DNA of 64,000 bases, from NCBI GenBank assembly GCA_020891255.1, contig BQFW01000005.1, positions 930,001-994,000 on the forward strand. Direction: 5' to 3'. Below are positions 21,985-45,836 of the stretch, in pieces. Source of the stretch: Entomortierella parvispora E1425 (lineage: Eukaryota > Fungi > Mortierellomycota). A model generated the notes under the pieces. It searched no databases. It worked only from the letters and a program-made list of their open reading frames with translations, and had not been told where the DNA came from. The translations under genes and the position numbers were made by a program. Position 1 is the first letter of the stretch; each line of letters begins with the position of its first letter.

Positions 21985-24900
21985 ATGCCAAAGTCCAGTA
22001 GCAAGAGGAAAAAGGAGAAGAATGCCGACTTCAAGGTACTGCTCGCAGTCTTGCTACCAAAGCCACGCCTACCTTTGTGCAAAGAATGTACACTCACTAG
22101 GCATCCTGTCTTGATCAAATAGAAAACCAAATTGAAGGTTGGAAAGAAAAAGGCTGTGTCCGACAGCTTCACCGATACCTCCTTCAAGTCTCGAGGTAAA
22201 CACTGGAACGCCTTACCATCTCCTTGGATGAAGCGACCGTCCTCTGGAGACATTGTCCGATCACAATAGGATCTCACCACCTTTATCTTTTTAATTTCTA
22301 GCCATTTCATTGCCCAGTCAGTCCATTACTCATGACAAGACAGCCCTCCTCACCAACTCGCGCAATGTCACGTTCTCGGAGCTCATGACCCAGTTGAAGC
22401 ATTACAGTCCTAGCACTCGGAAAGACGCCCTCCTGGGTCTTCGGGATCTCTTCCACCGTCATCCACACTTGCTGCCTCTTCATCTCGGTGTCCTTGTTAA
22501 CACGATCCTTCGTCTGCTTATTGACGATGTAGGTTCACTTGGCATTGCTGGATCTGATTGAATATGCAAGAGTCCGACAATCGATGCACTAACCTTCTTG
22601 CAATCTCATAGTCCAACATGGTTCGCAAGGGGCTTCAGACTTTCTTGGGAGAGTTTATTCCCATGCTCCATCCTCGTGATGTCCATCCTTTCTTGCCACT
22701 CCTCGTCGTTTATACTTGTTCGGCCATGACACATATTCTCGAAGATATCCGCGAAGATGCTCTCGCCTTCTTGGACTTGTGGGTTGCTGCCGGTGGACAG
22801 ATGGTTGTCAATGGATTCTGGGACAAGGTATGGATCAAATTCAAGCGGATGGCCGGTGTATTCATGGTGATTCCGTTGCTGACTCTCTTTTTCTTCCTAC
22901 AGATCATTCCCAACTACATCTCTCTGCTGACCTCAGACTCAAACGCCACCAATGCCTCAAAACTTTCAAGTGCAATGTCATTCTCGGCATCATCCACTAG
23001 TCGTATGGTTGGCAGTGGATCCACAGCCGTATCAGGAGCAACACAGAAGGTTGTCGCTGGAGCCACTGGAAAGAATGCACCTGGTTCTCTGAAGGCCAAG
23101 AGTGAAGTGTTGCAGAGTTTGGCAGGATTCTTGCAGGAAGGTCTTGGAGGGGAAGGAGGTGAAAAGGATCCATACTGGTTCTTGAGAAACTTTTTGGGAA
23201 CAGCTCATGCACGCCAAGCCTTCAACTCTTCCAGGACTCAGATTGGATCTCAGACACGGAAATCAAAGAAACGCAAATCAAAATCGTCCGAGGGAAGCAA
23301 CAAACGTGCAGCTGGACGTTCAGTACGCAAGGACTCGGCTTCTGGATCAGACGAGGAGGATTCTGATGAGGATTCTGATGAGGAGTCGGACGAGGAGAGC
23401 GACTCGGACAGTGACAGCGAGGAGGAATCTGCCGACGAAGAAAATGCCCTGCAGGATGACGCGCTTCACTTTGATGCCTCCCCTGTAGTTTCTTTTGGAG
23501 AGGCCAAGAGACATCTTGGAGTTCTCGCCACATTCCCAATTCACCCTTCGACAATGTCATCGTCGACTGTCCAAGCCATCTTTGGTCAGACTCAGACCTC
23601 CTCCAACAACATCAGTGGCGCTGCAAGTATTCCCATCAAAGTTTTCCCCCAGCAAGGAGGAGCCAGTGCCTCTGGAGCAGGAGCCATCGTTGGATCAAGC
23701 GGCTCTGGAAAAGCAGGCAATGACAACATGAGTGGCGTTCAAGGAAGACTGGCCCAAATCCGACCTCTCATCTCAACCTTGCATCCCTTGCTGTTGTCAG
23801 TCTGGCTTGATACTGCACCAACTGTTTTCAAGTCCTCAACAACAATCCATGCTGGCCATCCATTGACGATCGTTCATCTTGTCATGAAGATCTGGGGTAT
23901 CCTTTGGAGAGCAGCATTGGCAAGACCCAAGAAGAAGAATATCGACTCGGAGGAGGAACAAGAGGAGGAGAGACAAGAACAGAAGTGGCTCGACGAGTTT
24001 TTGCAAAGCTTGCTCAAGCACGTTTTGATTTACTTTCCCTTTGGCAAAGATACATTGGGTATGACCGACCCAAAGGTAAGTTGAGATGTGCTCTTGGATT
24101 TGAATTAATTGAATATTTGATTTGAAATTTGAAGTCTGATACGTTCTGGTATTCTTTATGTCGCACTCATAGGTGGCATCTCTTCTTCAGGATATGAACA
24201 CCACTTACTGCGAGCTTACCTCCTTGTTCTTGTTGGGATCTGGCACTGGAAGGATAAAACGCGTTCCCAAGAGCAGTTTGAAAAAGGCGCCAGTCGCTGA
24301 AAAGTCGAAGCGTCAAAGTGCAAAGAACGTCAAGTCCTCTTACCGACCCTCAAACAAGTCGTTCAAGAAACAAAAGCAGGCCGAGGAAGCAAAGGAGTCC
24401 TCAGATGATGACGACTATGACAGCGAGGAAGATGAGGAAGTCACTGCTGCCAAATCGGACGATATGGTCTCTATCCAAGTGGAAACCCCGGCCTGGGCAG
24501 ATCAAGTCGTGGACTTTGTTCTTGATACGCTTGGATGGAAGAACCCTGACGCCGAACCAGCCGAGGATCAAATGTCGACGGTGTCTTCCGACTTTAAGCC
24601 TGAGCATCTCATTGCTCTTCTCCCAACCATCTGGACATTGTTGAACTGTTTGGATACTCAGAGAAGAGAGTGGGTATTCGAGGCGTTCATGGCCTACTTT
24701 GATGAGGCACACGTTCAGAGTGGCACCAAGCGCATTGTGCTTCAATTCTTGGCTCTCGTAATCAAGGTATGCATGAACACACATTTTTTCCTTCAATTGG
24801 CTGTTTCTACGTCTTCATGTTGGCTTACAATATACCTTTTTTCTATCCTGTAGCTTCAATCGCACCCCCATTACACAGGATCATTCACCATTTTGGTACC

Positions 24901-30810: not shown

Positions 30811-33565
30811 CTACCAATAACCATTCCGGCGACCAGCATTCAGGACGTATTGTTGATTTCTCTGTCCACGTCTCACAAGATCTGCAGTCCATCGCATCAG
30901 AGCCCTCCATCCTGCCTCACCCTCTTTTCTGCCCTGTCCCACATACGCCAGGATAGCAAAAGCAATGGGGCTCTTACGCTTGTACAGCACTGCAAACACA
31001 ATCAACAACAGGACCGCGTTGATCAAGCCCTGTCGCAGGATCAGCTTCAGGATACCCCTGGCCGACCTTCGCTCCAATGCCTGAGTCTGTGATTTGATCT
31101 TGAGCGACTCTTGCAAGAGATCCAATCGTTCGTGCAAGACGGAAATGTCGGTCTGGAGTCGAACTACCTCGGTTTCCAGTTGTTGAGTCGACACCAAATG
31201 GGGGCACACCACCGTCACCGACTGATTCGTCACTTGATCCTTCACGACCACCGCGTTGGGGTTCTTGGGCACCCCAGAACTGGATCCACCAGAGAGCGCA
31301 GATGAAGCGGCGCGAGCAGAAGCCGCCGCCAAGCTGCTTCTCAAAGCTGTGAATCTAGATACAATTCCTTGTCCTATCCTCTTGCCTTGACTGGTCGCAG
31401 CATTGACTGCAGATGAAGAGGTGGGGCGAGTTGGCTCCACCGCCATTTTTGAGGCGGGCTCCGTGGCCGATCGCTGATGAAGTCCCGAAGGCTGGGTAAG
31501 ATCGGTCGACTCATTGCTCGCATCTTTTTTGTCCTGATGTTGGGTTGGCTCAATAGCGGGCGCGATAGCTGGTGAAGCTCCTGGTGCGATTCCAGGAGCA
31601 GTGGCAGAGGCCGCTCTAGCCTGAGCAAACATGGCGGCTGGGCACATAGCGCCTGAGGAGGCAGTCTTTTTAGACACTGGACACACGAGTCCCTCCATTG
31701 ATGAAGCCTGGGGCAATGAAGGTGCAGACGCCGAGTGGTGGATCACAGGTTGATTCTGGGTGTCGTTCAGGGATGCCAAAGTCGCCGGTGACTCGGAGGC
31801 ATTGGTGGCATCATGAAGAGCAAAGACGCGGTAAGGCTCCACTCTCGGTGATTTCAGCTCTGCGGATTCCTTGGCCAGGATGTCTGATCTCGAATCCTGC
31901 AAAACGGTGGGAATTTGGATTTTGATGTCCGTGTGAGCTCCTTCTTCCTTGATATCTTCATCCTCATCTTCGGCGTCAAATACGCCTTCGTCAATAAACT
32001 CCTTCACATCCGAGTCTTGGCGGTGAGGTGAGGGTGGAGAAGGCATCTGTGCCACGGTTGGTGAGATGTACGGCAACTGGTTCTCCATTATCCGCTCCTC
32101 TTGCTCGCTTGCGTCATATTCTTCGGACGACTGGTATACATCGTCGTCGTCATCGTCGTCATCGTCATCTTCATCTTCATCTTCATCATCTTCTTCGCTT
32201 TGTTCGTCTTGTTCGTCGTCATCTTTCTCATCGTGTTCATCCGCGTCCTCCACAGTGTTGTCTTTTCCCGTTTCTTCCTTCTCCTGCAGACGGTGCTCAG
32301 CAACTTGCACGGATACGGGCCGTGACTTTTGGACTTCGGCTTCATATGCTTCATCGTCTAGGATTTCTTCCTCGACTACGGTCTCCGTGATTTCGCGGTA
32401 TCCCTGATCATCGTTGTCCGTTGTTTCGTTGAGAGCCTGGTTATTGTCCTCTGCTTCACTGTCGACGATATTTTCACTTGCAAGCTCATAAACAGAGGTT
32501 GCAGCCGACTGAAGTCCTCCTGTTGCGGTTGACCGAATCGACTGACTGAGGGATCCTTTGCGGGCCGAAGATGGGCGCAAGGAGGGTGAAGAGGAGGTCT
32601 GGACTGGTGAAGGAGATGAAGCGGATGAGAATGCAATTTGATCGATGATCGGCGGAAGCTCTTTTTCAGTGTTGATGCTTGAGAAGGTAGGCGAAGACGA
32701 TCGGGAAGGACGTTGCGTGATCTCCTCGGCCAGTTGGTGATGATCCGGATGGCTTCCTGGTTTTGTCAACGACTAGCAGGAAGATGCATAAAGCAGAGGC
32801 GCGTTAGCCATCTTGACCCAGAGATGACTCAATCCATGGTGAATCCTGATAAAAAAAAAAAAAGATTCTTCAAAGACTTACGCTCACAACCAGCTCCACG
32901 TAGGTGTCTTCGGCCTCCTTTGTTGTTTTGCCGCGCATGTTGGCCCACGCCTGCCATTTGCTCCTTGCGGCGATCTCAAAGAAAGCAGGCTTGAGGCCCC
33001 TCACATCGCCTTTGGTCGCTTGCTTGTAAGCTCCATAAAGCTAGTTGAAAGAAAAGAGAGGGAAGGAAACCCAAATGCCAAGCAAAGAAAGAAGAAAAAC
33101 ACGGTGAGTCTGTTGGTCGTGAAAGTGACTTTCACATGTGGGGACAGATCTCTTCATTTTCGTTGGATATGAGCCATTCCAGATCACACAGCAAATGAAG
33201 AGGGGCACACGACATATGAAAGAAAGGATTTTTCTTACCAAGAGCTGATCTTCTGGTGTGAACGAGACAACGTCGCTTCCATTGTTGCTGCTGCTGCTGC
33301 TGCTACTGCTGCCGGTGCTAGAGTTGAGAAGGGTATGGGTATCGGCGATGGCGCGGTTGCTGGCATTGACAACATGGACTGCACGGTCGAACGGCGTCAG
33401 ACCGGGCACAGTGGTGGAGAGAGCAGGCAGGGGTGTGAGAGGTGGGGAGCGAGAGCGTACTGCTGCCTGGGAAAGGGGTCGGTGAGGAGAGGATGGAGAA
33501 GTGGGTGAGAAGGAGGGGGGGAATGTCGATGAAGGAGAGCCAGACGATGGACTTGTTGCTGCCAT
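30811..33565 (-). CDS. Acyl-CoA-binding (ACBP) domain membrane protein, ACBD5/Atg37-like, about 815 aa, 3 exons
   Basis: Exons 33565-33239, 33040-32882 and 32772-30811. ACBP motif FDRAVHVVN...EDQLL|LYGAYKQATKGD...KPAFFEIAARSKWQAW..MRGKTTKEAEDTYVELV, then an acidic disordered middle, a coiled coil (LETEVVRLQTDISVLHERLDLL) and a C-terminal transmembrane segment. Confidence 0.85.
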
Positions 33566-34597
33566 TGCAGTGTGGAACTGGAACTGGAAGGAAGAATAAA
33601 CCGGCGGTGTTTTAGAATGAAGAGGGACTGAGAGCGAGAGAGAGCGAGAGAGAGAGGAGAATAAAAAAAAAAAAAAAAAAAAAAGAGTTGGAAAGACACT
33701 AGAGTAGAGTGGAGAAGTGGAGTGGGGATGCAACGCAATGCAATGTAATGACAAGAAAGAGACAGAGACAGAAGAGAACGAGTCGAGCGAAAGAGACAGA
33801 GAGACACCCAACAACAGCACGAACTACTGTACGCAACTAGCTGACTGTGCACGCACAAATCCTGGATCCGAGGCGACATGCCCGCCGATCGCAGCCGAGA
33901 CGAGACGGGGCGGACGAGGCGGACGAGGATGGACGCGGACGGAGAGGGCAGAGGACACGGCGAGAGAGAGAGAGCGAGAGCGGGGAGGGAGGGTTAAGGG
34001 TGCAGAGTGAGAGAGAAGAGGAAAGCGAGTCGGCGGTTAAGGGGCACAGACGCGTGTGAGTGCTGGACTGCTGGCACACGTTGTCGCATCGCCTGCTGTG
34101 GTTTGCGTGCGTGCGCGCTCTTGTTTCTTGGCTTGCCTGTCTCTGACTGGGCCACTGGGCAGAAGACCGGACCTGCGTTGGCTTAGGTTGCATCCGTGTA
34201 CGACCCGACCACACCCCAGACATCGATCATAAATATCCCCATCCTCCTCCCCTTGTCCCCCTTTGGTCCAGATATCGAGATGATCTGGAGTGGACAAAGG
34301 GCAAAGCGCACTCTGCTCTGGCCAATGGTCATCCGTCCCATGGTCACACTCGCTCGGGGCAAAGGGACAGACAGGTCAGGTCTGCGAGATGGAAGGGAGG
34401 TGAGCCACTTGTTCCCCCCCAAGAACATCTTCTCTTTCCTCCTTCCTTTCCTCTTTTTCTTCTCTCTTTCTCTTTTTCTCTCTTTCTTCTCTTTCATTCT
34501 TCTCATCAATTCGCTCATTCGCATTCTCTCTCATTCAACTTCCATTCCCAATTTCCTCTCTTTCCTTGTACTTTACTGTACTTGAATCCAACCTAGC

Positions 34598-37491
34598 ATG
34601 AAGTTTGCCAAACAGCTCGCTCTCCGAAGCATCCCCAGTTGGGCGCCTTACTATCTCGACTACAAGTCATTGAAGCACTTCATCAAATCGTCGTTCAAGG
34701 ACGTGGCTGGCAAGTTCACTCTTTCATGTTTACCTAAGCACCTGTATTTCATTTCCCCCAAGCAGTACCTAACACGATCTTTAATGTCGTCATAGAGCCC
34801 CTGGGTTCGCTCGAAAGTGCAGATGACGAACATGCCCCCCATGCTGATCCAGTAAACGGTGAGACGGATCAAAATGTCGAGCCCGTCCTCGATCAAGTCA
34901 AAGAGTCACCCGAGAGTCAGGAAGCGATTATGGATTCGGATTCGCAGAGTCCCGCTGTCCCGATCATCCAAAAGACATTGGTTGACGTTGATCATGACGA
35001 CAAGGGTCTTGCATCGGGCGTCCACTCCAAGAGCACGGATGATCCAGAGCGTGAGGCCAGTATTAGTCTCATTGTTGAAGGGTTTAAAGCCCTCCTCTGG
35101 GCCGAGCTGGAAAAAGTGAATGCACGCTATGAGGCTCAGGAACGGGTTGCTGGAGTGACGATGGAGCGACTGAATGCAGCGGTAAGTCTTGTGGATCGGG
35201 CGTCCGTCCCTGACCTCGAGGAATGTGGTCCTTGTCAACACAACGTAGGACAACAGATGCAACAGTGGTCTCATGCGCTCTCCACATTTTTGATTTGATC
35301 GGTCGATTTTTAGTGGCGAGCCAACTTTACTCCTGCAGAGTTGAAGCAATGGTGAGTGGACCGTGCCTTGATGTGGACCCGTGCTTCTAGCCCATCCTGA
35401 CTATTCTATTCTCAATTTCTTGGGATCATAGGAGGGCAGAGCTGACAGTCCTGATCCTGAATCTCGAGTACCTGCTCGAGTTCAGCCAGACAAACATCAC
35501 CGGTTTCAAAAAGATTATCAAAAAGTTTGACAAACAGTATCGCGGATGCCATTCTCCAGGAGAGCCAGCCTCGTCTGCAGATTCGTCGATCCACTTTGGA
35601 GAACAGGGTCACAACATCGGTAGCCCCCAGAATGGAAGCAATCAGGAGACTCTGACCTATCTCGGTACTTCAGTCGACTCTGAGGCCGCAGGCCCATTGT
35701 CCATGTTCAATGCCTTGGGCATCCACGGTCGAGGAACACCTACTATCTACCTGCCAAGTAGCTATCCAGAGCCAGCAGCCAGTCTTCATCCACAGGAGTC
35801 TTTTATTCGTCATGTACACTCACCCAACAGTCACCACAAGAGTCTTTTTTACCACAACTACTATGGAGGGGTGTCGGCATTGTGCGTTGAGTTTTGGAAG
35901 ATGGTGACTGAAAAGACGTTTGCAAAGAGCGAAAAGGACGAGCGCCTTTTGGCTCAGGCTAGAACGGTAAGACGGCTTTTTCTTTTTGCTTTGGTGTAAC
36001 TATGCCACCATGCCACCATGACCCCAAGACGCTCTATTGACGCACCTGCCCTCTCTCTGGTCTTCTGGACTCGACTAGCTGTGGAGAAAGCGTACGCCAG
36101 TGGTGCCTGAAATGACGTCTCCGCTATCGCTGAATGTAGATCCAAAGGACTATCCTGTTTGGGACGACCTAGACCTAGAGAGTTTACCTTCAGGACGTCT
36201 GACGCGCCTCTGGGTTGTACTAGCAGAGGATGCAATGAGTACTCCGATCCGCGTACCCGTGATTGTGGCCAAGGGAGTCCGACCGGGTCCCGTTGTGGGT
36301 TTGGTAAGTGAGCCGTCGGCCGAAACCAAAACCATCGATGAATTGAGCGCTCCAAAGTCCGATGTCCAGGGAGCTTCCTCTTTTAACTTTGTGGTCCCCA
36401 TGTGAATTTTTGTCGGTGTTTCTAGACGGCTGCCTTGCACGGAAACGAACTCAACGGAATCCCTTTGACCCACCGCCTTGTACTTCAAGAGATTCAGTGC
36501 AAAGCCCTTCATGGAATTGTTGTCGCCGTCCCTGTGGCCAATGTTCCAGGATACTTGGCTCAGCAGCGCGGTTTTAGTGATGGAACGGATCTTAATCGAC
36601 TCATGCCAGGGTAGGCAACTGTGAACCGAGACATAGGGGGGTTTGGCAATCCGTTACTAACTTGTATACTCTCCTATTACAGAAAAAAGGATGGTACGAC
36701 CTCGCAAGTGTACTCTTACAACCTGATGACCAGGATCATTCGGCATTTCACCCATCTTATCGATCTTCATACGGCGTCCAAGGGACGAGTCAATTCACTC
36801 TATGTCCGAGCCAACATGCAGAACCCGACAACACGACACATGGCTCGTCTTCAGAACCCACAGATTATTGTTCACAACACCTCGCCCGACGGATCTCTTC
36901 GTGGAGCGGCGATGCAGGAGTACAACATTCCGGCCATTACGGTCGAGATTGGTGACCCCTCTCGGTTCCAGAAGCGATTTGTCAAAAGCGCCATCTTGGG
37001 CGTGACCAATATTCTGAGCCACCTGAAAATGATTGAGGATGACCATGAGGTTCAGGACTATGACCCCGTTGTCTGCGCAAAGAGTGTAAGAAAAACAAAA
37101 TGTGGAAAACAGCCCAATTGTGGCGTCCTTGTTCGTTTGTGCTTGTCCGAGGAGGAAAAAAAACAGAGGACAGATAACAGATAAGCTGACCTTTTTACCC
37201 CTTATCTCTTTTTTTTTTTGGCTTGTAAAAAAACAGTACTGGATTTTCACCAAAGGAGGTGGTATCTTGAATGTATTGCCAGATGTCAATACCTGGGTTA
37301 GAAAGGGAGAGCTCATTGCGACACTGCACAACATTTTTGGAATGGAGGAGCATCGTTATTTTGCGCCCGAGGATGGTATTGTGGTAGGCAAGTCGGTGGA
37401 TCCAGTGTGTCAGAGTGGCTGCCGTATTCTTCACCTAGGTGTCGTCAGCGATAGATACCCGGAAGGCAAGATCAATGATGGACATTTGTAG
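34598..37491 (+). CDS. SPX domain fused to a succinylglutamate desuccinylase/aspartoacylase (AstE/AspA, M14-like) zinc hydrolase, 712 aa, 8 exons
   Basis: Exons 34598-34709, 34796-35181, 35314-35351, 35432-35966, 36079-36303, 36426-36610, 36683-37085 and 37237-37491 sum to 2139 nt in one open frame. SPX: MKFAKQL...W..YYLDYKSLKHFIK and NITGFKKIIKKFDK. Hydrolase: AALHGNE, DLNRLMPG, IDLHTAS, ITVEIG, plus a C-terminal beta-hybrid domain. Confidence 0.85.
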
Positions 37492-39761
37492 ATGTGGGGA
37501 AGGATGCTTACCTATGTAGTCTAGTTAAAAATAAAAAAGAAGAGCGTGTTTAGCAACTATGCACCGAGACTCTTGATCTTCAGATTTTTCGTTTTCCGTG
37601 CCTCCATGTTCTCACTATCATCGTCACCATCAACATCATCATCATCATCTCCCATAAATAGCCTGCAGGATCTACATCACCCCCAGCAGTGTTCAATAGG
37701 CTTTGAAAGAGCACGGAGAGAGAGATATTATTTCCGTTTCGTTCATTCGGCCCCACTTTGTCTCTGGGAACAAAATGAAATAAACGAGGGGAGGGTTTGA
37801 GCTGCATCCTTCACTCCAAGAACTGCCGAGGGATGATCCCCCCTGTTTTGTTCTGGAAAGAGGTCTCGATCCATGGAGCGCGTTCATTGATAGAAGAACG
37901 AACAAGGAAGGGGGGGGGGCTGACTATGTAGGGCCAATCCTTTTTTTTTTTGTACCACCCAATGGCAACGTTGCTGCAACCGCTCCCCCCCCTTGACCTG
38001 CCCTCAAATTGCAATTCTCCGCGTGCGTGCCTTCGCCCACTGACCTTGAGGCTGAGGGTGTGGAACGACAAAAGGCACGTTGCCGAGTCAGGGTTTGAGG
38101 TTGCCAACAATTTTTTTCGTCACGATCGAGGAGGTCTACGACCGGGAGAACCATTGGTTCTCCCCCCCCTCCCCCCTCCCCTCAAAGATGGTCAGGTTGA
38201 CAAGGAGTAAAGCAACCAGCAGGGATTAGCATTTTTTTTTATTTTATTTCAATTGATTGAAATAGAGATTGCATGCAATCGCACAGCGTTTTTTTCGATG
38301 CAGTGGATTCCATACAAGGGTGAACAGAAAAAAAAGAAAGGCAAAACCAAAAGAAAAAGTGTCCGTGGACTCTGTGTGATTCGACAGAGCCAAAAAAAAG
38401 TCAATTTATGGGAGGAAGGTGAATGAACAGGTCAAAGCAAAATCAAATAATTGTTCTGTTGGCTCTCATTCGCTTTTCATTTTAGCGCGTAAGCTGCTGG
38501 GCTTGACTCTGGCGGTTGAGTGGCAACTTTGGGAAAATTGGCTTCCTATCTTCCAGAAAGATAGAAATTCTGAATCGGGCTGGGAGAAGGGAAAGGGAGG
38601 GAGTTGTGAGTGTCCAGACTTTTTACGAGATGAGTGGGGTCCATGGATGGTTCTTTTCGACGCTGTCCTGGTTTCGGGAAGATTGTACAGTACATGTACA
38701 AGATCCATTATCAAGCATGGTGAGCATTCGATTTCCTTGTTGATAAGACAAGAACTGGAAGAAAAGGCAGTAATGTAGAGTCCACACCAGTTCTCATCGC
38801 GACCAAGAACGGGGAGAGATTAGACGCCCCGTGAAGAGCCGTCATTGTTGTTATCTTGATGATCATGCACAGCCATCAAAGGAACCCAAACAATCGGCAC
38901 GCAGGAGAAGCAGAGGGCAAAGAGGCAGAGCAAACGATTGCAGACACACAGGTCAAAAAAGCAAGGGACCTTGCACACAGATAGATATGATTTATTGGCA
39001 AGATAAAATGGCAGATGCGCGTTCTAAAAATACTCTGTGGGTCCATACTCAAGGCCCAGCAGGGAAGGAACCACTTTTTTGCAGCCCATTGAATAAGACG
39101 CTACCTATTCTATTGCGGCCAGTCAACACATGAACCTTCATCATGAGGATCATCCTTTGGCATCATGATGCCGGAGTTGCATCCTTCATCTGTGCATGAA
39201 TCCTCCTTGTGGTTCCCACAGAAGCAATCGAGCGACAAGAAAATGAAAAAAGAAGAGAAAAAAAAAGAGAGCCGATCTTGATCTGCACCGTGATGGTGCC
39301 TCATGGACAAAAGAGAACCCCACTTGCTCATTTCATTCTTGATTCTTCCCTGCTGGCCGGCCGCTCGCCATAAAAAAAGAATACTGTAATGAAAAAAAAG
39401 AGAGGCAGGCGTCCGTCCCTTTATTTTTAGCTCCATCGCACCACAGTCGAGTCCAGTCCAGCCCAGTCCAGAAAAGCACACAGTCAGTGAGAGAGGAGGG
39501 CTCTCAACTGTGTCCGTTCTGTTCTGTTCCTCTTTCTCTCACTCTCACTACTGTTCTTTACTGCCGCCTCTTTCTTTTAAAAAAAAACCAAAATCTCGTT
39601 TCTTTCTATCTCTCTTTTCTCTTCTCCTCTCATCATCATCTTCATCTTCATATACCCATAACCCCTCCCTTTCCTCCTTTCCTCATTCTCTCGTCTCTCT
39701 TCTCTCCTCTCATACCCCCTCTTTTCCGACCTTCAGGACTAGTCTCTCATATCTTGCAAAC

Positions 39762-42193
39762 ATGATCGCCGCTTCCTCGCTCTCGATCCAGACCCCAAAG
39801 CAGCACCAGGAGGCCTCTTCTCCTTCCGAGGCTGTGCGCCACCTCAAGGAACGCTACCAGGCGGCCGGTCAGGGACACCTCTTCAACTACTACGATGAAC
39901 TCACCACCGAGGAACAAAAGAAGCTCGTGGACCAACTCTCGGCCTTGAACGTCGAGCGCGTCAACAGGATCCACCAAAAGGCCACCACCTGCCCTTCGCC
40001 CATGCTCAGCAACCAGGCCGCCCTTCTCGCCCCTTTGCCCGATGAGTGCTTTGACTCTGTCATGGATGCCTCGGCTGAAAAGACCCAGGAGTGGCGCACC
40101 ATCGGATTGAACCAGATCAGCCAGAACAAGGTCGCCGTCATTCTCTTGGCCGGTGGTCAGGGCACGCGTCTCGGCTCTTCGGCCCCCAAGGGTTGCTACG
40201 ACATCTCCTTGCCCTCCAGCAAGTCTCTTTTCCAGATCCAGGCCGAGCGTATCCTCAAGCTCCAGGAGATGGCCCAGAAGCAGCCCGGTGCTGTTGACAA
40301 TGTCGTCATCCCTTGGTACGTCATGACCTCTGGACCCACCCGCCCCGCCACTGTTGCCTATTTCCAGGAGAACAACTACTTTGGCGTCTCTAGTGATAAC
40401 GTCGTTTTCTTTGAGCAAGGTATGTAACGGAAAAGAGGTTCAAAGCCTTGTTGTTTATTTTTGGTGTGTTGTTGTCGTCATGGACGGGGAGGGGACCCAT
40501 TGAACATGATCTGTGGAGCAGGATCAAAAAGCAAGGGCTGCAGGACAACGGAGCAATCGACCCACAGCTGCTTGTTGCACTGCAGCTGCAGCGTGGAACA
40601 AGAAAAAGGAGGCTAAAGGGACAAGATCAAAAATCAAAAAAAGTGAGGGGACGCAAAGTGGCCCTGGCTTTTTGTTTGTCTGCGTGCGTGTAGAGATGTG
40701 CGCAAGAGGGATGAAGGAAGGCAGTAAAAAAAAAGGACAAAAGCGCGCGTTGAATCGCGTCTCAGGTGGGCCAGGGGGCATGAATGAGGGGAGGTGAGTG
40801 CGACAAGGGTCGCGTTTATCTCCTCATTTTTCTTCCTGTTCCAGGTGCCAGAGGGGTCCCATGGGAAGAGTGGGTGAGTGAATGTTCTAATCAGAACATG
40901 CACGAACCAACTCGGGTATTTATTCCGGTTCTTCTTTCCCTTTGACTTTTTGCTCAATCGACCTGCAGTTCGGAGCCAGAGGGACGCCCAGAGGGCAATC
41001 TCTATCATGACCTATTTTTTCTATTTTTTCTGTTCTCTATCGGACGGGGTTGGAAAACACACAAAAGAGGATTGTGATCAATCGGTCCGGTCCAGAATGA
41101 TGATTCCATCAGTCTGAAACTGACTTAGCTCATCTTCGTGTGCAAAAAGTGTTCTCTGTGGTGTGCATTCCCGCCTTGTCTTTTGGCCTTCTGGCCCTTG
41201 CCCTTCTTCTTTTCCTTTTGTTCGCTCGTGAGTGGATCGATTCAGGAACGAAAATCGCTGACCTTTTTACCCTCTCTGTCTCACTCGTTATCCATAGGTA
41301 CTTTGCCTTGCTTGACCTTCGATGGAAAGATCATGATGGAGTCAAAGTCGCAGGTCGCTGTGGCTCCCGATGGCAACGGAGGTGTCTATGCCGCTCTCCG
41401 TGGCACCGGAGTGTTGGCCAACATGGCTGAGCGCAAGATCGAGTTCCTCAACGCCTACTGTGTCGACAACTGCTTGGTCCGTGTGGCCGATCCCGTCTTT
41501 ATCGGATACTGTGTCCAGAAGAACGCCGACTGCGCTGCCAAGGTCGTTCGCAAGAACTACCCCACCGAGCCCGTCGGTGTTGTGTGCCTCCGCAACTCTG
41601 CCTTCAACGTGGTCGAGTACTCTGAGATCAACGACGACGTCGCTCACGCCATCAACCCCAAGAGCGGCCAATTGGCTTTCGGAGCCGGCAACATTGTCAA
41701 CCACTTTTATACCCTCGACTTTTTGAACAAGGTCGAGTCGTTCGAGGGCGACTTGGAGTACCACATTGCTCGCAAGAAGATCAAGTCGGTCGATCTCCAG
41801 ACTGGTGAGGTTGTTGCCCCCAAGCAGGTCAACGGCATGAAGTTGGAGTTGTTCGTCTTTGATGTCTTCCCCTTCACTGAGCGCATGGCTGTCTTGGAGG
41901 TTGAGCGTCGTGAGGAGTTCTCGCCCCTGAAGAACGCACCCGGCTCTGGTCAGGACTGCCCCGAGACTTCTCGCTCTCACATTTTGGAGCAGCACGCACG
42001 CTTCATTGAGGCTGCTGGAGGAAAGATTGTTGTTGGTGAGGAAGATGCTCAGGTCGACGGTGTCCCCACATTGGAGTTGTCGCCTTTGGTCTCATACGCT
42101 GGTGAGGGTCTCGCCGAGATTGTTGCTGGCAAGTCGATCAAAACTCCTATCCAGATCCACACTGTCGAAGATCTCAAGCGCGCCGTCTTCTAA
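39762..42193 (+). CDS. QRI1: UDP-N-acetylglucosamine pyrophosphorylase, 517 aa, 2 exons
   Basis: LLAGGQGTRLGSSAPKGCYDI, VIPWYVMTSGPT, FFEQG|TLPC, APDGNGGVY, GMKLELFVFDVFPF, EFSPLKN. Intron 40420-41297. Also called UAP1. Confidence 0.95.
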
Positions 42194-42830: not shown

Positions 42831-45423
42831 TTACAGGGAAGAAACGGCCTTTTCTCTTTCCTCTTCCTCGACCATAGACGTGTCAAGACGGAGTCTCTTT
42901 TCAGGGCCCTCCTCCTGGTACGGGTTGGAGGAAGAGGATGAAGATGCCACAGACGGACTCTCGACATCGCCTTCCATCAGATCAGAATCCTCCATGCCGT
43001 TGCCAGAGACCACAATCGTCCACAAGTGCCGTGTCTGATCCTGGCCCTTGTTCTCACTCTTGGACGCCAGAGTCAAGAGGTCCGACTTGACCTTGGGGGT
43101 CAAGACATAAAACGTATTGTCCTGTCGGATCAACCCACGCTGCTCAAGGCGGGCCAAAAACCCGGACCATTCTTGCTTGGCCTTGCTCTTGCTCAATTCG
43201 GCCTTTGGTAACGTCGAGCGATCGATCAAGGAAGCGGCCATTGATTCCGCCTTTTCTGGTTGTTGTTGTTGTGGTTGTTGTTGTGGATCATCATCGATCA
43301 GAGAAGATGAAGACATCAATGAAGCGGTATCCTTGTCCGTATCCTCCTGGTCCTCATGGTGATCACCCTTGGTATCCTGTCCCTCCCCTGCGTCGAGGGT
43401 CTGATTCTTGGCAGCCGCCACCTCGGCCGCTGCCTGCACACGTTCTGCGCGGGTCAATAAATGCTGAGCAGGATCCAGTCCCAAGCGCACCAGTTCGTCC
43501 CTGTAAATCCTCTCATTCTCCACATTGGCAAGGGCCTGGAAATACACATTCGTCATGCCCGCAAACTTGCGCGGATGATCCCATTGCGCCGCAAAATCCA
43601 GGAACATGCGCATGTCCTTCAGATCCTGATCGCCTTCCTCCTCGGGATGTTGGGCTGCTGTGGTCGTCATGCCCTTGGGTGAAAGCGTCGACAGATCCAG
43701 ACTGCGGTGGTTGAAGAAGGATTGGATCGCTGCTAAACCCTCGGGGCTGCGCAAGATGGTCGAGACTTCCACGCCTGGGAGCTTGAGTTTATCATTCTTG
43801 TGGAGGATATAGTTCTCCTCGACGGGGGTATCTTCTGGGTCCCTGACAGGGATCACTTTGCCCTCGCGGACCAGCCGTTGAAGGTATTGCTGAGCGGCCA
43901 TGTAGCGTTCTTCAGGTTGGTAAATCTTTCGGAATCGACCATAGTACTTGCTGATCGAGTTGAGCAACGCATTCACAGTAAGCGGCTAAACGAAGGTCAA
44001 AAGAGAATGTCAAAGAGTTTAGATTAGCTTGGGGTTGCCCAAAGAACACAAGTGCCCGATCTAGGTTGAAGATGGGGGTTTCTTCTTGTTTTTTTTTTAC
44101 CTTTCCCTTGCCACATGTTTTAACCAAGACTTCCAAGATCTCCTGGGTCGTCTCCGCTTCCGACAAAGGGAACCGTTGCGCAAACGTCTGGAACCCAGGC
44201 TTGAGCTGACCCGCCAACATATTTTCATAAATCGCCACGCCCGCAAACGCATCCTTGGCCGCATACCAGACCCATTTCGGGTCCAACGTCTCCCGATCCC
44301 AGTTCCATCCCAAGATCTTGCGCGTCTTGATCACCTCCCGCCCCGGACGTCCATACATGGCATCCAGATCCGCCAACGACGTGCCCAAGATCCGGCGTTC
44401 ACTCGCCATGTGCGCCAACTCGACCAGTCCCTGACAGTCCACGCCATAATCCTTCCTCAACCCTTGCGCATCGCCCACAATCCCGACCCCACACATCAAC
44501 TGTTGCGGGTCTTCCAAAAAGGCTTTCAGACGGGGCGGGAACGGGATCTTCCTCTTTTGCTTCACGCCCAAGATGTTGTAGATCTGAAAGATCAAACAGA
44601 CATCCTGCGTCGCAATCTGGATCAACGACACCTCTTGTTGGACTTTGGTGATGAACGTCGTCGTCGTCTCCGTGTCCAAGCCCACAGGCCCAGGTCCGCC
44701 GCTCCCTTTCGTGGCCTCGTAGTATTCTGTGAACAACTGCATCATCAACTCGGCCTCTGGGTAGGTCGAGGCCAAAAAGACGGGCGGCAATTCCCGGACC
44801 CGTTGGATATGGCCCTCCGCCATGGCCTCACACAGGATCGCGACACTGGGCGTGAGGTATTCCTCTCCATGGGCGGGCGGACTCGGTGCTCGCACTGCTG
44901 GGGGCAGTCGAGAGTGACCAGGGCGGGACTGTTTATGGGTCATGATGGGTTGGATCCTGGGTTCACGCTTGGCCTTGGGGCCTGAAGGGTGTGGACGGGG
45001 TGTGGGGTGCTGGTGAGGGTGTTCAGAAGGAGAATGCCGAGACTTGGGTCTTGCAGAGGAGGTGTTGTTCCAGTGAGGTGTGGGTGGTTGAGAAGGAGCT
45101 GAAGTAGAAGAGGTGAGCTGCTGGGGAAAAGGCTTCTTTGACTTGACTCTTTTCGCCGCTGCGGCTGCTGCGGCGGCAGTCGTACCTGTTGCAGAGGTCG
45201 ATGCTGCAGGAACCACAGCAGGGGCGGCAGGGGTAGAAGAGACGGACGCCTCGGCGGAATGGAAGCGCCGGTTGGCCATGACCGGACGAGTTGGTGGCAC
45301 CTTGGACAAAGACAAGGTCAAGCGGAGAGCCGCAGACGAGGACGACGAAGAGGAGGAGGAAGGGGAGGAAGAGCGATGGGCACAGACAAGGGATGAGCAG
45401 CGCGTGCGGATGCGAGGCAACAT
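42831..45423 (-). CDS. WRN/EXD2-like DEDDy 3'-5' exonuclease with N- and C-terminal extensions, about 825 aa, 2 exons
   Basis: ExoI VGLDTET, IQIAT, ExoII FLEDP...GVGIVGDAQGL, ExoIII YAAKDA. Intron 44100-43986 joins the two ORFs in frame. Arg/Ser-rich N-terminus starting MLPRIRTR. Confidence 0.82.
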
Positions 45424-45836
45424 TAGACGGGGCAAGGCAGATCCAAAAGGGAAGAGAGTGTCCCCGTGCGGAATGGAGTGGATGAATGCAGGTGCGGAGA
45501 GAGAGTGAGAGGGTGAGAGGGTGAGAGGCAGTGTTGTTGGACCGACTTTTGACTTTTTGGCTGGTGTGTTGTGTGTGTGAGTGTGTGAGAGAGAGTGCAG
45601 TGTGTGCAACAACACCGCAGGGGGACAAAGGGGACAGGGAAGGTCCATGCGATTGATTGATTCACACGGTGGCTGAATTCATTCCCTGGTGGGAATGGGA
45701 TGCACCTGAGAAAAGAGTCAACAACAGTCACATAATTTCTTTTTCTTTTTGCGACATGCATTTTAATGCGATGGATTTTGACGGTGATATACAAAACGAA
45801 AGAGTGGGAATGTAAAAAAAAAAGGATAGAGATCGC

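What the first reader, a model, noticed from the sequence alone, without database searches (positions are those of the whole stretch)
34598..37491. SPX-AstE/AspA fusion: a candidate inositol-pyrophosphate-regulated zinc deacylase
Seen in sequence: eight exons splice into one 712-aa frame. The SPX domain keeps both ligand-binding patches (DYKSLK in the N-terminal helices; TGFKKIIKKFDK lysine cluster). It is followed by a linker and a complete M14-like AstE/AspA hydrolase with zinc ligands HxxE (HGNE) and DLH, the NR substrate motif (DLNR) and a catalytic Glu (TVEIG). Established: SPX domains bind inositol pyrophosphates and control phosphate-homeostasis proteins (fungal Pho81, Pho87/90/91, Vtc2/3/4/5, Gde1, Syg1/XPR1); AstE/AspA enzymes remove acyl groups from N-acyl amino acids or peptide termini. 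I know of no characterised protein joining the two. Inference: phosphate status may directly gate an amino-acid or peptide deacylation step, linking P sensing to N/C metabolism in this lineage.
Basis: partly seen in the sequence, partly recalled or inferred. Interest (0 to 1): 0.85.

Follow-up and report, generated by a model that had tools for sequence, protein, structure and literature searches.

The report
SPX phosphate sensor fused to zinc amidohydrolase
This is a real single fungal gene that joins a phosphate-status sensor (SPX) to a complete zinc amide-cleaving enzyme; the fusion is old and widespread in early-diverging fungi and some protists, nobody seems to have studied it, and it may tie phosphate signalling to turnover of an unknown peptide-like compound.

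Summary
Observation confirmed. The eight exons (34598-37491, +) splice into 712 aa, 100% identical to the deposited protein EMPS_03786 of Entomortierella parvispora. Pfam finds SPX (65.8 bits) and AstE_AspA_cat (104 bits). All six SPX ligand residues (Y22, K26, K210; K206, K209, K213) and the hydrolase zinc and catalytic residues (H437, E440, R490, H523, E582) are at least 90% conserved or invariant in 54-66 orthologues.

The fusion is not an annotation artefact. The exon 4/5 joint lies inside a block conserved across fungal phyla. Single transcripts from protists carry both domains.

It is not lineage-specific. It occurs in Mortierellomycota, Glomeromycota, Kickxellomycotina, Entomophthoromycotina, chytrids, Saitoella (Ascomycota), Balamuthia and Spongospora. 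The fungal clade is monophyletic (100/99).

The hydrolase is not AstE, ASPA or DoeB by NCBIfam cut-offs; its fold is closest to DoeB (TM 0.82).

New here: the nearest bacterial homologues (50-56% identity) sit beside a conserved ~480-aa ATP-grasp-like ligase, often with a RimK ligase. In Balamuthia that ligase gene lies directly downstream of the SPX-hydrolase gene.

Most likely mechanism: inositol-pyrophosphate-gated hydrolysis of an ATP-grasp-made amide. I found no paper on it. No RNA data could be laid for this genome. The scan holds no earlier report of this fusion on other DNA.

The parts
34598..34709 (+). Exon 1: start codon and SPX helices alpha1-alpha2, with Tyr22 (34661-34663) and Lys26 (34673-34675) of the phosphate-binding cluster
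   Evidence: Pfam SPX positions 1-31 on this exon alone, E 2.3e-07. Y22 is kept in 65 of 66 and K26 in 66 of 66 orthologues.
34710..34795 (+). Intron 1 (86 nt), with a GC-AG boundary (donor GCAAGT)
   Evidence: The protein across the joint (FKDVA|EPLGSLES) matches orthologues (FKDFAGPLESLES).
34796..35181 (+). Exon 2: disordered acidic insert (aa 38 to about 120), then SPX helix alpha3
   Evidence: AF2 pLDDT is below 50 for aa 41-102, and a helix at 121-166 has pLDDT above 90. The insert is gapped in about 55% of orthologues.
35314..35351 (+). Exon 3 (38 nt): loop between SPX alpha3 and alpha4 (WRANFTPAELKQ)
   Evidence: Conserved in Mortierellaceae orthologues.
35432..35966 (+). Exon 4: SPX helix alpha4 with the lysine cluster K206, K209, K210 and K213 (35511-35534); a disordered linker (aa 225-322); then the C-terminal SPX helices (aa 328-357)
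   Evidence: Pfam SPX positions 302-327. The alignment to Vtc4 chains has an offset of 77, which gives K129, K132, K133 and K136. These lysines are kept in 62-65 of 66 orthologues.
35967..36078 (+). Intron 4 (112 nt, GTAAGA...CTAG): the joint between the SPX half and the hydrolase half. If retained, the frame stops after 11 codons (TAA at 35997-35999).
   Evidence: The flanking residues LLAQART|LWRKRTPV lie in a block (SEKDExLLxxARxxWRKRxP) shared with Basidiobolus, Geosiphon, Linderina, Neoconidiobolus, Synchytrium and Calcarisporiella.
36079..36303 (+). Exon 5: short linker and the first beta-strands of the hydrolase domain. It holds an internal ATG (Met369, 36112 by my own count from the sequence) that could start a hydrolase-only product.
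   Evidence: AF2 strands at 397-434. The ORF listing shows the internal Met. Balamuthia is annotated with SPX-less isoforms.
36426..36610 (+). Exon 6: zinc ligands His437 and Glu440 (HGNE, 36438-36449) and Arg490 of DLNR (36597-36599)
   Evidence: Pfam AstE_AspA_cat positions 8-63, E 5.4e-12. H437 and E440 are kept in 65 of 66 and R490 in 66 of 66 orthologues.
36683..37085 (+). Exon 7: third zinc ligand His523 (DLH, 36768-36770) and catalytic Glu582 (TVEIG, 36945-36947)
   Evidence: Pfam AstE_AspA_cat positions 84-192, E 8.2e-12. Both residues are invariant in 66 orthologues. They align to HSG and TTELG of DoeB 6twm.
37237..37491 (+). Exon 8: C-terminal beta-rich domain of the AstE/AspA fold, and the stop codon
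   Evidence: Aligns to DoeB residues about 258-334. AF2 strands at 623-697 have pLDDT above 90.

Best explanation
One eight-exon gene (EMPS_03786 of Entomortierella parvispora) encodes a soluble two-domain protein with no membrane segment.

The N-terminal SPX domain has a complete inositol-polyphosphate/pyrophosphate binding surface. Two disordered inserts interrupt it.

The C-terminal half is a complete, catalytically competent zinc amidohydrolase of the AstE/AspA (M14-like) superfamily, in the DoeB-like structural subgroup. It belongs to none of the named enzymes.

Shown here: the gene structure, both domains, conservation of every ligand and catalytic residue, vertical inheritance across fungi, and linkage of the hydrolase to ATP-grasp amide ligases in bacteria and in Balamuthia.

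Inferred: as in other SPX proteins, binding of InsP7/InsP8, which report phosphate sufficiency, changes contacts made by the SPX domain. This switches the attached hydrolase on or off. The hydrolase cleaves an amide bond next to a free carboxylate in a product made by the partner ATP-grasp ligase(s). That product would be a small peptide-like metabolite or a short C-terminal amino-acid tail. Phosphate status would thereby set the level of that compound.

The direction of the switch and the substrate are unknown.
For: Gene and fusion:
- The 712-aa model is identical to the deposited protein.
- SPX plus AstE_AspA_cat occurs on one polypeptide in about 80 or more models from many phyla.
- The exon 4/5 joint lies within a conserved block.
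- Transcript-derived complete ORFs carry both domains: TSA GECG01006364 (P0227) and MMETSP transcripts P0259 and P0265.

SPX competence:
- Y22, K26 and K210 correspond to the phosphate-binding cluster (PBC) of ScVtc4: Y22, K26, K133.
- K206, K209 and K213 correspond to its lysine surface cluster (KSC): K129, K132, K136 (PMC9911596; offsets).
- All six are at least 90% conserved.
- The long helices are modelled at pLDDT above 90.

Hydrolase competence:
- H437, E440, R490, H523 and E582 are invariant or nearly so.
- Foldseek TM is 0.82 to DoeB 6twm and about 0.8 to 3na6, 3cdx and 2qj8.

Inheritance:
- The fungal SPX-fused clade has 100/99 support with phylum-congruent topology.

Substrate lead:
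- Bacterial homologues at 50-56% identity lie next to a conserved ~480-aa protein in 6 of 8 contexts, and next to a RimK-type ligase in 5 of 8.
- That partner folds like glutathione synthetase, GspS and RimK ATP-grasp ligases.
- In Balamuthia its homologue (about 50% identity, E 1e-135) is the next gene downstream of the SPX-hydrolase.
Against: - There is no transcript evidence from this organism.
- No biochemical datum exists for any member.
- I could not inspect interdomain contacts in the model; only pLDDT and pTM (0.72) are returned.
- The ligase partner is not within 10 kb of the gene in the window, in Linderina or in Basidiobolus. Its presence in E. parvispora could not be tested.
- Balamuthia is annotated with SPX-less isoforms, so part of the enzyme pool may escape SPX control.
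- The deep backbone of the tree is unresolved. One versus several fusion events, and any bacterial origin, remain open.
Confidence: 0.6

Rival explanations
1. Two adjacent genes (an SPX-only gene and a stand-alone hydrolase starting at Met369) were joined wrongly by a chance in-frame intron.
For: The hydrolase half from Met369 (344 aa) has the size of bacterial stand-alone enzymes of 320-350 aa. Retaining intron 4 would end an SPX-only protein after 11 codons. Some pipelines did call hydrolase-only models, for example the Linnemannia elongata 303-aa model P0279. No RNA reads are available for this genome.
Against: The same architecture is called independently in about 80 or more genomes across phyla. 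It also appears in single transcripts of protists. The residues on both sides of the joint form one conserved block, including in species with a short linker. P0279 starts at Met410, inside the fold, so it is a truncated model.
Confidence: 0.03
2. The fusion is real, but the SPX domain works as a ligand-dependent docking module, as plant SPX proteins do with PHR factors. It would bring the hydrolase to, or sequester it from, another protein or compartment, rather than gate catalysis in cis.
For: Stand-alone plant SPX proteins act by PP-InsP-dependent binding to partners (established; structures 7e40 and 7d3y appear among the hits). In the Mortierellaceae, long disordered segments separate the SPX helices from the hydrolase, which would suit a tethered arrangement.
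Against: Most orthologues outside Mortierellomycota have a short linker (517-550 aa in total). The SPX end is joined directly to the conserved WRKRxP segment. The pTM of 0.72, despite 165 disordered residues, suggests a defined two-domain arrangement. Neither point is decisive.
Confidence: 0.2
3. The enzyme is a classical small-molecule N-acyl-amino-acid deacylase (AstE-, ASPA- or DoeB-like, acting on N-succinyl or N-acetyl amino acids) in amino-acid catabolism. This is what the first reader proposed. The ATP-grasp neighbourhood would then be irrelevant to the fungal protein.
For: The best solved relatives are DoeB, AstE-like proteins and ACY3. The HxxE, NR, H and E active-site motifs are shared. 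A paralogous chytrid clade is fused to HutD, a domain linked to histidine utilisation, which hints at N-acyl or N-formyl glutamate-type substrates.
Against: Scores against the curated equivalogs are far below cut-off: DoeB 65 versus 402.7, AstE 21.9 versus 170, ASPA 19.1 versus 180. Sequence identity to DoeB is only about 22%, whereas the ligase-linked bacterial enzymes are 50-56% identical. CphZ, a dipeptide hydrolase, is also among the structural neighbours.
Confidence: 0.25
4. The SPX domain is an evolutionary relic with no ligand-sensing role, and the protein is simply a constitutive hydrolase.
For: None specific. Two large inserts interrupt the domain in this species.
Against: All six ligand-contact residues are kept in at least 90% of 54-66 orthologues, across a span that includes several fungal phyla and protists. 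The inserts fall between helices and are absent in most orthologues.
Confidence: 0.05

Closest known systems
SPX-enzyme fusions of yeast: Gde1 (SPX-ankyrin-GDPD glycerophosphodiesterase) and Vtc4 (SPX-TTM polyphosphate polymerase)
   Same: The SPX domain starts at residue 1 (MKF...). The same six basic and tyrosine ligand residues are present. A catalytic domain follows on the same chain. The presumed logic is the same: PP-InsP occupancy sets enzyme activity.
   Different: The output domain is a zinc amidohydrolase with no evident phosphorus substrate. No member has been characterised. The family is absent from the usual model organisms: it was not seen in Saccharomyces, plants or animals.
DoeB/EutE, N-acetyl-L-2,4-diaminobutyrate deacetylase of Ruegeria pomeroyi (PDB 6twm, 6twl)
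   Same: Best solved structural and sequence match for aa 410-697 (phmmer E 2.3e-15; Foldseek TM 0.82). The HxxE, NR, H and E motifs match, as does the C-terminal beta domain.
   Different: Identity is only about 22%. The NCBIfam DoeB equivalog scores 65 bits against a cut-off of 402.7. There is no SPX domain, the gene context is ectoine catabolism, and the organism is bacterial.
Bacterial stand-alone AstE/AspA-family 'predicted deacylases' in ATP-grasp/RimK operons (for example Polyangiales MAG P0298 and loci L001 and L005-L008)
   Same: These are 50-56% identical over the whole hydrolase half and are the nearest non-eukaryotic relatives in the trees.
   Different: They have no SPX domain and are 320-350 aa long. 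They are encoded next to a ~480-aa ATP-grasp-like ligase and often a RimK-family ligase. Their function is also unknown.
CphZ, cyanophycin dipeptide (beta-Asp-Arg) hydrolase (PDB 8ein)
   Same: Same superfamily fold (Foldseek E about 3e-16). It is an example of this fold degrading the product of an ATP-grasp-type ligase, cyanophycin synthetase.
   Different: It is a more distant relative (TM by target 0.64, 15-17% identity). It has no SPX domain.
Chytrid HutD-AstE/AspA fusion proteins (for example Spizellomyces punctatus P0231 and Batrachochytrium salamandrivorans P0229)
   Same: The hydrolase domain is paralogous (about 50% identity) and is also extended at the N-terminus by a putative small-molecule-binding domain.
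   Different: The N-terminal domain is HutD/Ves (PF05962), not SPX. They form a separate clade (100/99). Several chytrids have both proteins.

Membership tests
SPX domain (PF03105), inositol polyphosphate/pyrophosphate sensor | Profile match above Pfam's gathering score, starting at residue 1 | tested here: met
   65.8 bits against a cut-off of 27.8, E 9.5e-18, from residue 1. Exon 1 alone scores 31.6 bits.
SPX domain (PF03105), inositol polyphosphate/pyrophosphate sensor | Phosphate-binding cluster Tyr22, Lys26, Lys133 (ScVtc4 numbering) | tested here: met
   Y22, K26 and K210. The numbering comes from an offset of 77 to Vtc4 chains 5iit and 8i6v; the residue list is from PMC9911596. Kept in 65, 66 and 65 of 66 orthologues.
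SPX domain (PF03105), inositol polyphosphate/pyrophosphate sensor | Lysine surface cluster Lys129, Lys132, Lys136 (ScVtc4 numbering) | tested here: met
   K206, K209 and K213. Kept in 65, 63 and 62 (plus 3 Arg) of 66 orthologues.
SPX domain (PF03105), inositol polyphosphate/pyrophosphate sensor | Helical-bundle fold with long alpha3 and alpha4 helices | tested here: met
   AF2 helices at 2-34, 121-166, 173-219 and 328-361, mostly with pLDDT above 90. I made no separate structural search of the SPX part.
SPX domain (PF03105), inositol polyphosphate/pyrophosphate sensor | Binds InsP6 or PP-InsP | not testable with these tools
   Needs ITC or a similar assay on recombinant protein.
AstE/AspA superfamily (PF24827, M14-like zinc hydrolases) | Profile match above the gathering score over the full catalytic domain | tested here: met
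   104.1 bits against a cut-off of 25; residues 426-608 cover profile positions 1-192 of 192.
AstE/AspA superfamily (PF24827, M14-like zinc hydrolases) | Zinc ligands His-x-x-Glu plus a distal His; the Arg of the N-R motif; a catalytic Glu. The roles are taken from established work on aspartoacylase and are my own knowledge. | tested here: met
   H437, E440, H523, R490 and E582 are present. They are invariant or 65 of 66 in orthologues. They align to the same motifs of DoeB.
AstE/AspA superfamily (PF24827, M14-like zinc hydrolases) | Two-part fold: an alpha/beta catalytic domain plus a C-terminal beta domain | tested here: met
   Foldseek TM by target is 0.79-0.82 over about 325 columns to 6twm, 3na6, 3cdx and 2qj8.
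Succinylglutamate desuccinylase AstE (NCBIfam PRK05324, TIGR03242) | Score at or above the curated cut-off | tested here: not met
   21.9 bits against a cut-off of 170. TIGR03242 is not reported for the window protein.
Aspartoacylase ASPA (NCBIfam PRK02259) | Score at or above the curated cut-off | tested here: not met
   19.1 bits against a cut-off of 180.
DoeB/EutE N-acetyl-diaminobutyrate deacetylase (TIGR02994) | Score at or above the curated cut-off | tested here: not met
   65.2 bits against a cut-off of 402.7. The name some records carry, for example in Smittium, is therefore not justified.
Described SPX protein classes (Pho81, Pho87/90/91, Vtc2-5, Gde1, Syg1/XPR1; plant SPX, SPX-EXS, SPX-MFS, SPX-RING; algal SPX-VTC, SPX-SLC) | Partner domain after SPX is one of: ankyrin/CDK-inhibitor, SLC13-type transporter, VTC/TTM, GDPD, EXS, MFS, RING | tested here: not met
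   The only other Pfam domain is AstE_AspA_cat. The surveys I read list no such class.

The most novel reading that the evidence does not exclude
SPX-hydrolase and its ATP-grasp ligase partner form a previously unrecognised synthesis and breakdown pair for an unknown peptide-like metabolite or C-terminal protein tag. The pair would have been inherited or acquired from bacteria. In eukaryotes, fusion of the degrading enzyme to SPX placed it under inositol-pyrophosphate control. This would be a new output branch of phosphate signalling, present in early-diverging fungi, amoebae and rhizarians and lost from most Dikarya, animals and plants. One attractive form of the idea, which is speculation, is that the compound is a nitrogen-rich counter-ion or store whose level must track polyphosphate.
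Probability: 0.3. Interest if true: 0.8.

Novelty: new variant of a known kind. Interest (0 to 1): 0.62.

Why it matters
SPX domains are the common receptor through which eukaryotes read phosphate status. Every characterised SPX protein handles phosphate itself, by transport, polyphosphate synthesis, glycerophosphodiester hydrolysis or control of the PHO/PHR regulon.

A conserved SPX-gated amidohydrolase would extend that signalling to carbon and nitrogen (amide) metabolism. It is found in fungi of ecological and applied interest: Mortierella and Linnemannia, arbuscular-mycorrhizal relatives, chytrid pathogens such as Synchytrium, and the amoeba Balamuthia.

The linked ATP-grasp ligase gives a practical route to the unknown substrate. 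The family is also a clean case of a regulatory module present in early-diverging fungi but lost in the Dikarya model species, which explains why it has gone unnoticed.

Tried and rejected
- **RNA evidence.** The look-up of sequencing runs listed no RNA run and only DNA or unknown runs of the species. No junction reads were obtained.
- **Literature.** Five searches combined SPX with desuccinylase, aspartoacylase, AstE_AspA or deacylase, or with SPX class names. They gave nothing on this architecture. Reviews and a dinoflagellate survey list no such class.
- **A remembered paper.** A comparative-genomics paper on amidoligases that I recalled from memory could not be fetched. I do not cite it.
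- **Solved structures with one exon.** This gave only noise. The whole hydrolase half was needed.
- **ATP-grasp partner or RimK inside the window.** tblastn found nothing. Nothing lay within 10 kb in Linderina or Basidiobolus either.
- **Fungal homologues of the partner.** The last homology search returned only the 120 best bacterial hits out of 3689. The fungal distribution of the partner rests on an Atlas cluster label and on AFDB hits without organism names.
- **Atlas search with the Basidiobolus orthologue.** It returned only bacterial stand-alone clusters.
- **Single versus multiple origin of the fusion, and direction of any transfer.** The tree backbone is unresolved. I make no claim.
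- **An SPX domain on the Balamuthia ligase partner.** Its N-terminus is not SPX-like.
Full report

Reading 34000-38200 and joining the eight proposed exons gives a 2139-nt frame of 712 codons ending in TAG at 37489-37491. The exons are 34598-34709, 34796-35181, 35314-35351, 35432-35966, 36079-36303, 36426-36610, 36683-37085 and 37237-37491.

Six introns have GT-AG boundaries. The first has a GC donor, GCAAGT.

The translation is 100% identical over its full length to P0159, 'uncharacterized protein EMPS_03786 [Entomortierella parvispora]', which UniRef names 'SPX domain-containing protein'. The window is therefore from E. parvispora (Mortierellomycota).

Pfam on the whole protein gives SPX (PF03105; 65.8 bits, cut-off 27.8) and AstE_AspA_cat (PF24827; 104.1 bits, cut-off 25; residues 426-608 cover the whole 192-position profile). 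The separate exons give the same two families. All the quoted motifs are present.

**2. One gene or two?**

This was the main risk. The hydrolase half from Met369 has the size of a bacterial stand-alone enzyme. Retention of intron 4 would end an SPX-only protein after 11 codons.

The answer therefore comes from relatives.

- An exhaustive HMMER search with exon 7 found many 500-900-aa proteins with the hydrolase at their C-terminal end. Pfam showed SPX at the N-terminus of most of those tested.
- A word-indexed search with the M. hygrophila orthologue, and then with a 54-sequence profile, listed the precomputed pair PF03105+PF24827 in many taxa:
  - every sampled genus of Mortierellomycota;
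  - Glomeromycota (Geosiphon, Ambispora, Paraglomus);
  - Endogonales (Jimgerdemannia) and Calcarisporiella;
  - Basidiobolus, Neoconidiobolus and Massospora;
  - many Kickxellomycotina (Coemansia, Linderina, Martensiomyces, Ramicandelaber, Smittium, Mycoemilia);
  - many chytrids (Synchytrium, Chytridium, Phlyctochytrium, Cladochytrium, Zopfochytrium, Blyttiomyces, Irineochytrium);
  - the ascomycete Saitoella complicata;
  - the rhizarian Spongospora subterranea.
- Cluster look-ups added Balamuthia mandrillaris (Amoebozoa) and MMETSP marine protists.
- Three of these are ORFs called 'complete' on single assembled transcripts and carry both domains: TSA GECG01006364 = P0227, and MMETSP P0259 and P0265. 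In those organisms the fusion is one mRNA.
- Most telling for the window itself, the residues on either side of the exon 4/5 joint (LLAQART|LWRKRTPV) sit inside a block, SEKDExLLxxARxxWRKRxP. Basidiobolus, Geosiphon, Linderina, Neoconidiobolus, Synchytrium and Calcarisporiella share this block, and they have much shorter linkers.
- The other six junctions also fall in sequence that is continuous in orthologues.
- A 303-aa hydrolase-only model from Linnemannia elongata (P0279) starts at Met410, inside the fold. It is a truncated call, not evidence for a separate gene.

I put the probability that this is a single fused gene at about 0.97.

**3. Anatomy**

The AlphaFold2 model was built on the 54-sequence alignment. 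It has mean pLDDT 77 and pTM 0.72.

- SPX helices lie at 2-34, 121-166, 173-219 and 328-361.
- Two disordered inserts (41-102 and 225-322) split them. These inserts are gapped in about half of the orthologues and are largely a Mortierellaceae feature.
- A confident alpha/beta hydrolase domain and a C-terminal beta domain cover 397-697.
- There is no hydrophobic segment of membrane-spanning strength: the maximum 19-residue Kyte-Doolittle mean is 1.49. The N-terminus is the SPX start itself. The protein is most simply cytosolic; this is inference.

**4. Is the SPX domain competent?**

PDB sequence hits include rice SPX1, Chaetomium Gde1 SPX, XPR1 and Vtc4.

The Vtc4 chains align with a constant offset of 77. 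In ScVtc4 the phosphate-binding cluster is Y22, K26 and K133, and the lysine surface cluster is K129, K132 and K136 (PMC9911596). The window protein has Y22, K26 and K210 for the first cluster and K206, K209 and K213 for the second.

In 66 full-length orthologues these residues are kept in 65, 66, 65, 65, 63 and 62 (plus 3 Arg) sequences. Five of the six (all but Y22) are flagged nearly invariant in the cross-kingdom alignment A1; Y22 is kept in 65 of 66 orthologues. A relic domain would not keep them.

**5. Is the hydrolase competent, and which enzyme is it?**

H437 and E440 (HGNE), R490 (DLNR), H523 (DLH) and E582 (TVEIG) are invariant or 65 of 66. They align with the same motifs of DoeB. 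Their roles as zinc ligands, substrate or transition-state arginine and general base are taken from established work on aspartoacylase, which is my own knowledge.

Foldseek places the domain closest to DoeB/EutE 6twm (TM by target 0.82), then the uncharacterised 3na6, 3cdx and 2qj8, then CphZ, AstE, ACY3 and the classical M14 carboxypeptidases.

Against NCBI's curated models it scores 65 bits for DoeB (cut-off 402.7), 21.9 for AstE (170) and 19.1 for ASPA (180). It is a member of the superfamily but of none of the named enzymes. Names such as 'N-alpha-acetyl-diaminobutyrate deacetylase' or 'succinylglutamate desuccinylase' on some records are not justified.

**6. Evolution**

I built trees of the hydrolase domain: a quick tree with 106 rows and a careful tree with 75 rows.

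- The fungal SPX-fused proteins, Saitoella included, form one clade (100/99). Its inner topology follows the phyla: Kickxellomycotina; chytrids; Entomophthoromycotina with Basidiobolus; and Calcarisporiella, Glomeromycota and Mortierellomycota. This is vertical descent from an early fungal ancestor with loss in most Dikarya. No other Dikarya fusion appeared. The one other Dikarya hit, from Pestalotiopsis, is a stand-alone enzyme in another branch.
- SPX-fused proteins of Balamuthia, Spongospora and marine protists form further groups.
- A separate clade of chytrid proteins carries HutD (PF05962) instead of SPX.
- The backbone joining these groups to several bacterial stand-alone groups is unresolved. 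I make no claim on one versus several fusion events, or on gene transfer.

**7. A lead on the substrate**

The profile search shows bacterial stand-alone enzymes at 50-56% identity to the hydrolase half. That is far closer than DoeB, at about 22%.

I read the genomic context of eight such bacterial genes.

- In six contexts a ~455-486-aa protein without any Pfam or NCBIfam match lies immediately upstream or close by, often overlapping. The six copies are 51-66% identical to one another.
- In five contexts a RimK/GSH-S_ATP ATP-grasp ligase is adjacent.
- The unknown partner models confidently (pLDDT 92). Its best solved matches are glutathione synthetase, glutathionylspermidine synthetase, a gamma-glutamylcysteine-synthetase-like protein, YgiC/YjfC and RimK. 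The Atlas features point the same way. It is an ATP-grasp-type carboxylate-amine ligase.
- The partner also has eukaryotic relatives. The Atlas reports a structural twin cluster that is 86% eukaryotic, with Mucoromycota the commonest phylum. AFDB clusters hold entries at 39-54% identity named 'tubulin-tyrosine ligase family'; organism names were not shown.
- In Balamuthia the gene directly downstream of the SPX-hydrolase, on the same strand, encodes a 531-aa protein about 50% identical to the bacterial partner (tblastn E 1e-135).

Ligase and hydrolase are thus neighbours from bacteria to an amoeba. This is the usual signature of a functional pair that makes and breaks one amide-linked product. 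CphZ, a structural neighbour, is a precedent: it degrades the dipeptide derived from an ATP-grasp-type polymerase product.

The partner is not within the 64-kb window, nor within 10 kb in Linderina or Basidiobolus. I could not test whether E. parvispora encodes it elsewhere.

**8. Mechanism proposed**

- Shown: a soluble protein with an intact PP-InsP receptor and an intact zinc amidohydrolase on one chain, conserved for a very long time.
- Inferred by analogy with Vtc4, Gde1, XPR1 and plant SPX proteins: InsP7/InsP8 binding at the Y22, K26, K206-K213 surface changes SPX contacts and switches the hydrolase. Turnover of the ligase-made amide would then follow phosphate status.
- Unknown: the sign of the switch, the substrate, and whether SPX acts in cis or by docking to a partner.

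My confidence in this overall reading is about 0.6. The rivals are set out separately.

**9. Comparison with what is known, and novelty**

SPX fused to an enzyme is a known design (Gde1, Vtc4, and plant SPX-RING as an E3 ligase). This partner domain is not in any described SPX class. Full-text searches that combined SPX with aspartoacylase, desuccinylase, AstE_AspA or deacylase found nothing relevant.

The architecture is, however, already present in public databases through automatic annotation, and it is far from specific to this lineage. I therefore rate it a new variant of a known kind. It is uncharacterised rather than undiscovered.

**10. Earlier notes of this scan**

A first-reader note on another piece of the same genome (s1-185176) reports an SPX domain fused to an ACT-ACT phosphoserine phosphatase. 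I did not check it. If true, this genome holds more than one unconventional SPX-enzyme fusion.

Noticed in passing
Loci L001, L002/L003, L005, L006, L007 and L008 (bacterial); L011:12578-14608 (Balamuthia): A highly conserved ~480-aa bacterial protein family has no Pfam or NCBIfam model, and the search returned 3689 proteins at E<=1e-20. It folds as an ATP-grasp-type amide ligase and lies next to the AstE/AspA-like hydrolase, often with a RimK ligase. Its eukaryotic homologue is the next gene after the SPX-hydrolase in Balamuthia mandrillaris.
   Followed up: partly
Proteins P0229-P0249, P0020, P0023, P0026, P0035, P0036, P0051 and P0056 (chytrids): A paralogous clade of the same hydrolase is fused at its N-terminus to a HutD/Ves domain (PF05962) instead of SPX. 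Several chytrids (Synchytrium microbalum, Irineochytrium, Zopfochytrium, Cladochytrium) have both the SPX and the HutD versions. This architecture also looks uncharacterised.
   Followed up: partly
Proteins P0260-P0264 (Balamuthia mandrillaris): The annotation lists isoforms of the SPX-hydrolase gene: the full 579-aa form and N-terminally shortened forms of 437, 422 and 345 aa. The 345-aa form is the hydrolase alone. The window gene has an equivalent internal Met369 at about 36112.
   Followed up: partly
window 34710-34795: Intron 1 of the gene uses a GC-AG boundary (GCAAGT donor). The other six introns are GT-AG.
   Followed up: yes
window 34420-34590: A long pyrimidine-rich (CT) tract lies directly upstream of the start codon. 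Part of it (34443-34501) tripped the read laying filter.
   Followed up: no
window 39510-42190 (+): The next gene downstream on the + strand encodes a UTP-glucose-1-phosphate uridylyltransferase family protein (UDPGP, PF01704), split over at least two long ORFs.
   Followed up: no
window 16288-20373 (-), 43915-45648 (-), 48175-51199 (-), 22618-24081 (+), 14412-16181 (+): Other neighbours by Pfam are RPAP1, a 3'-5' exonuclease domain protein, a DEAH-box helicase (two ORFs), an Ipi1/Rix1-complex protein and an F-box protein. None has an evident link to phosphate or amide metabolism.
   Followed up: no
window 30814-32769 (-) and 33044-33820 (-): Two long ORFs upstream of the gene (652 and 259 aa) have no Pfam match at E<=1e-4.
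   Followed up: no
I did not check it.
   Followed up: no
Protein P0218 (Synchytrium microbalum, 1167 aa): This gene model places the SPX-hydrolase at residues about 650-1167 of a much longer protein. It is probably a merged model with an upstream gene.
   Followed up: no
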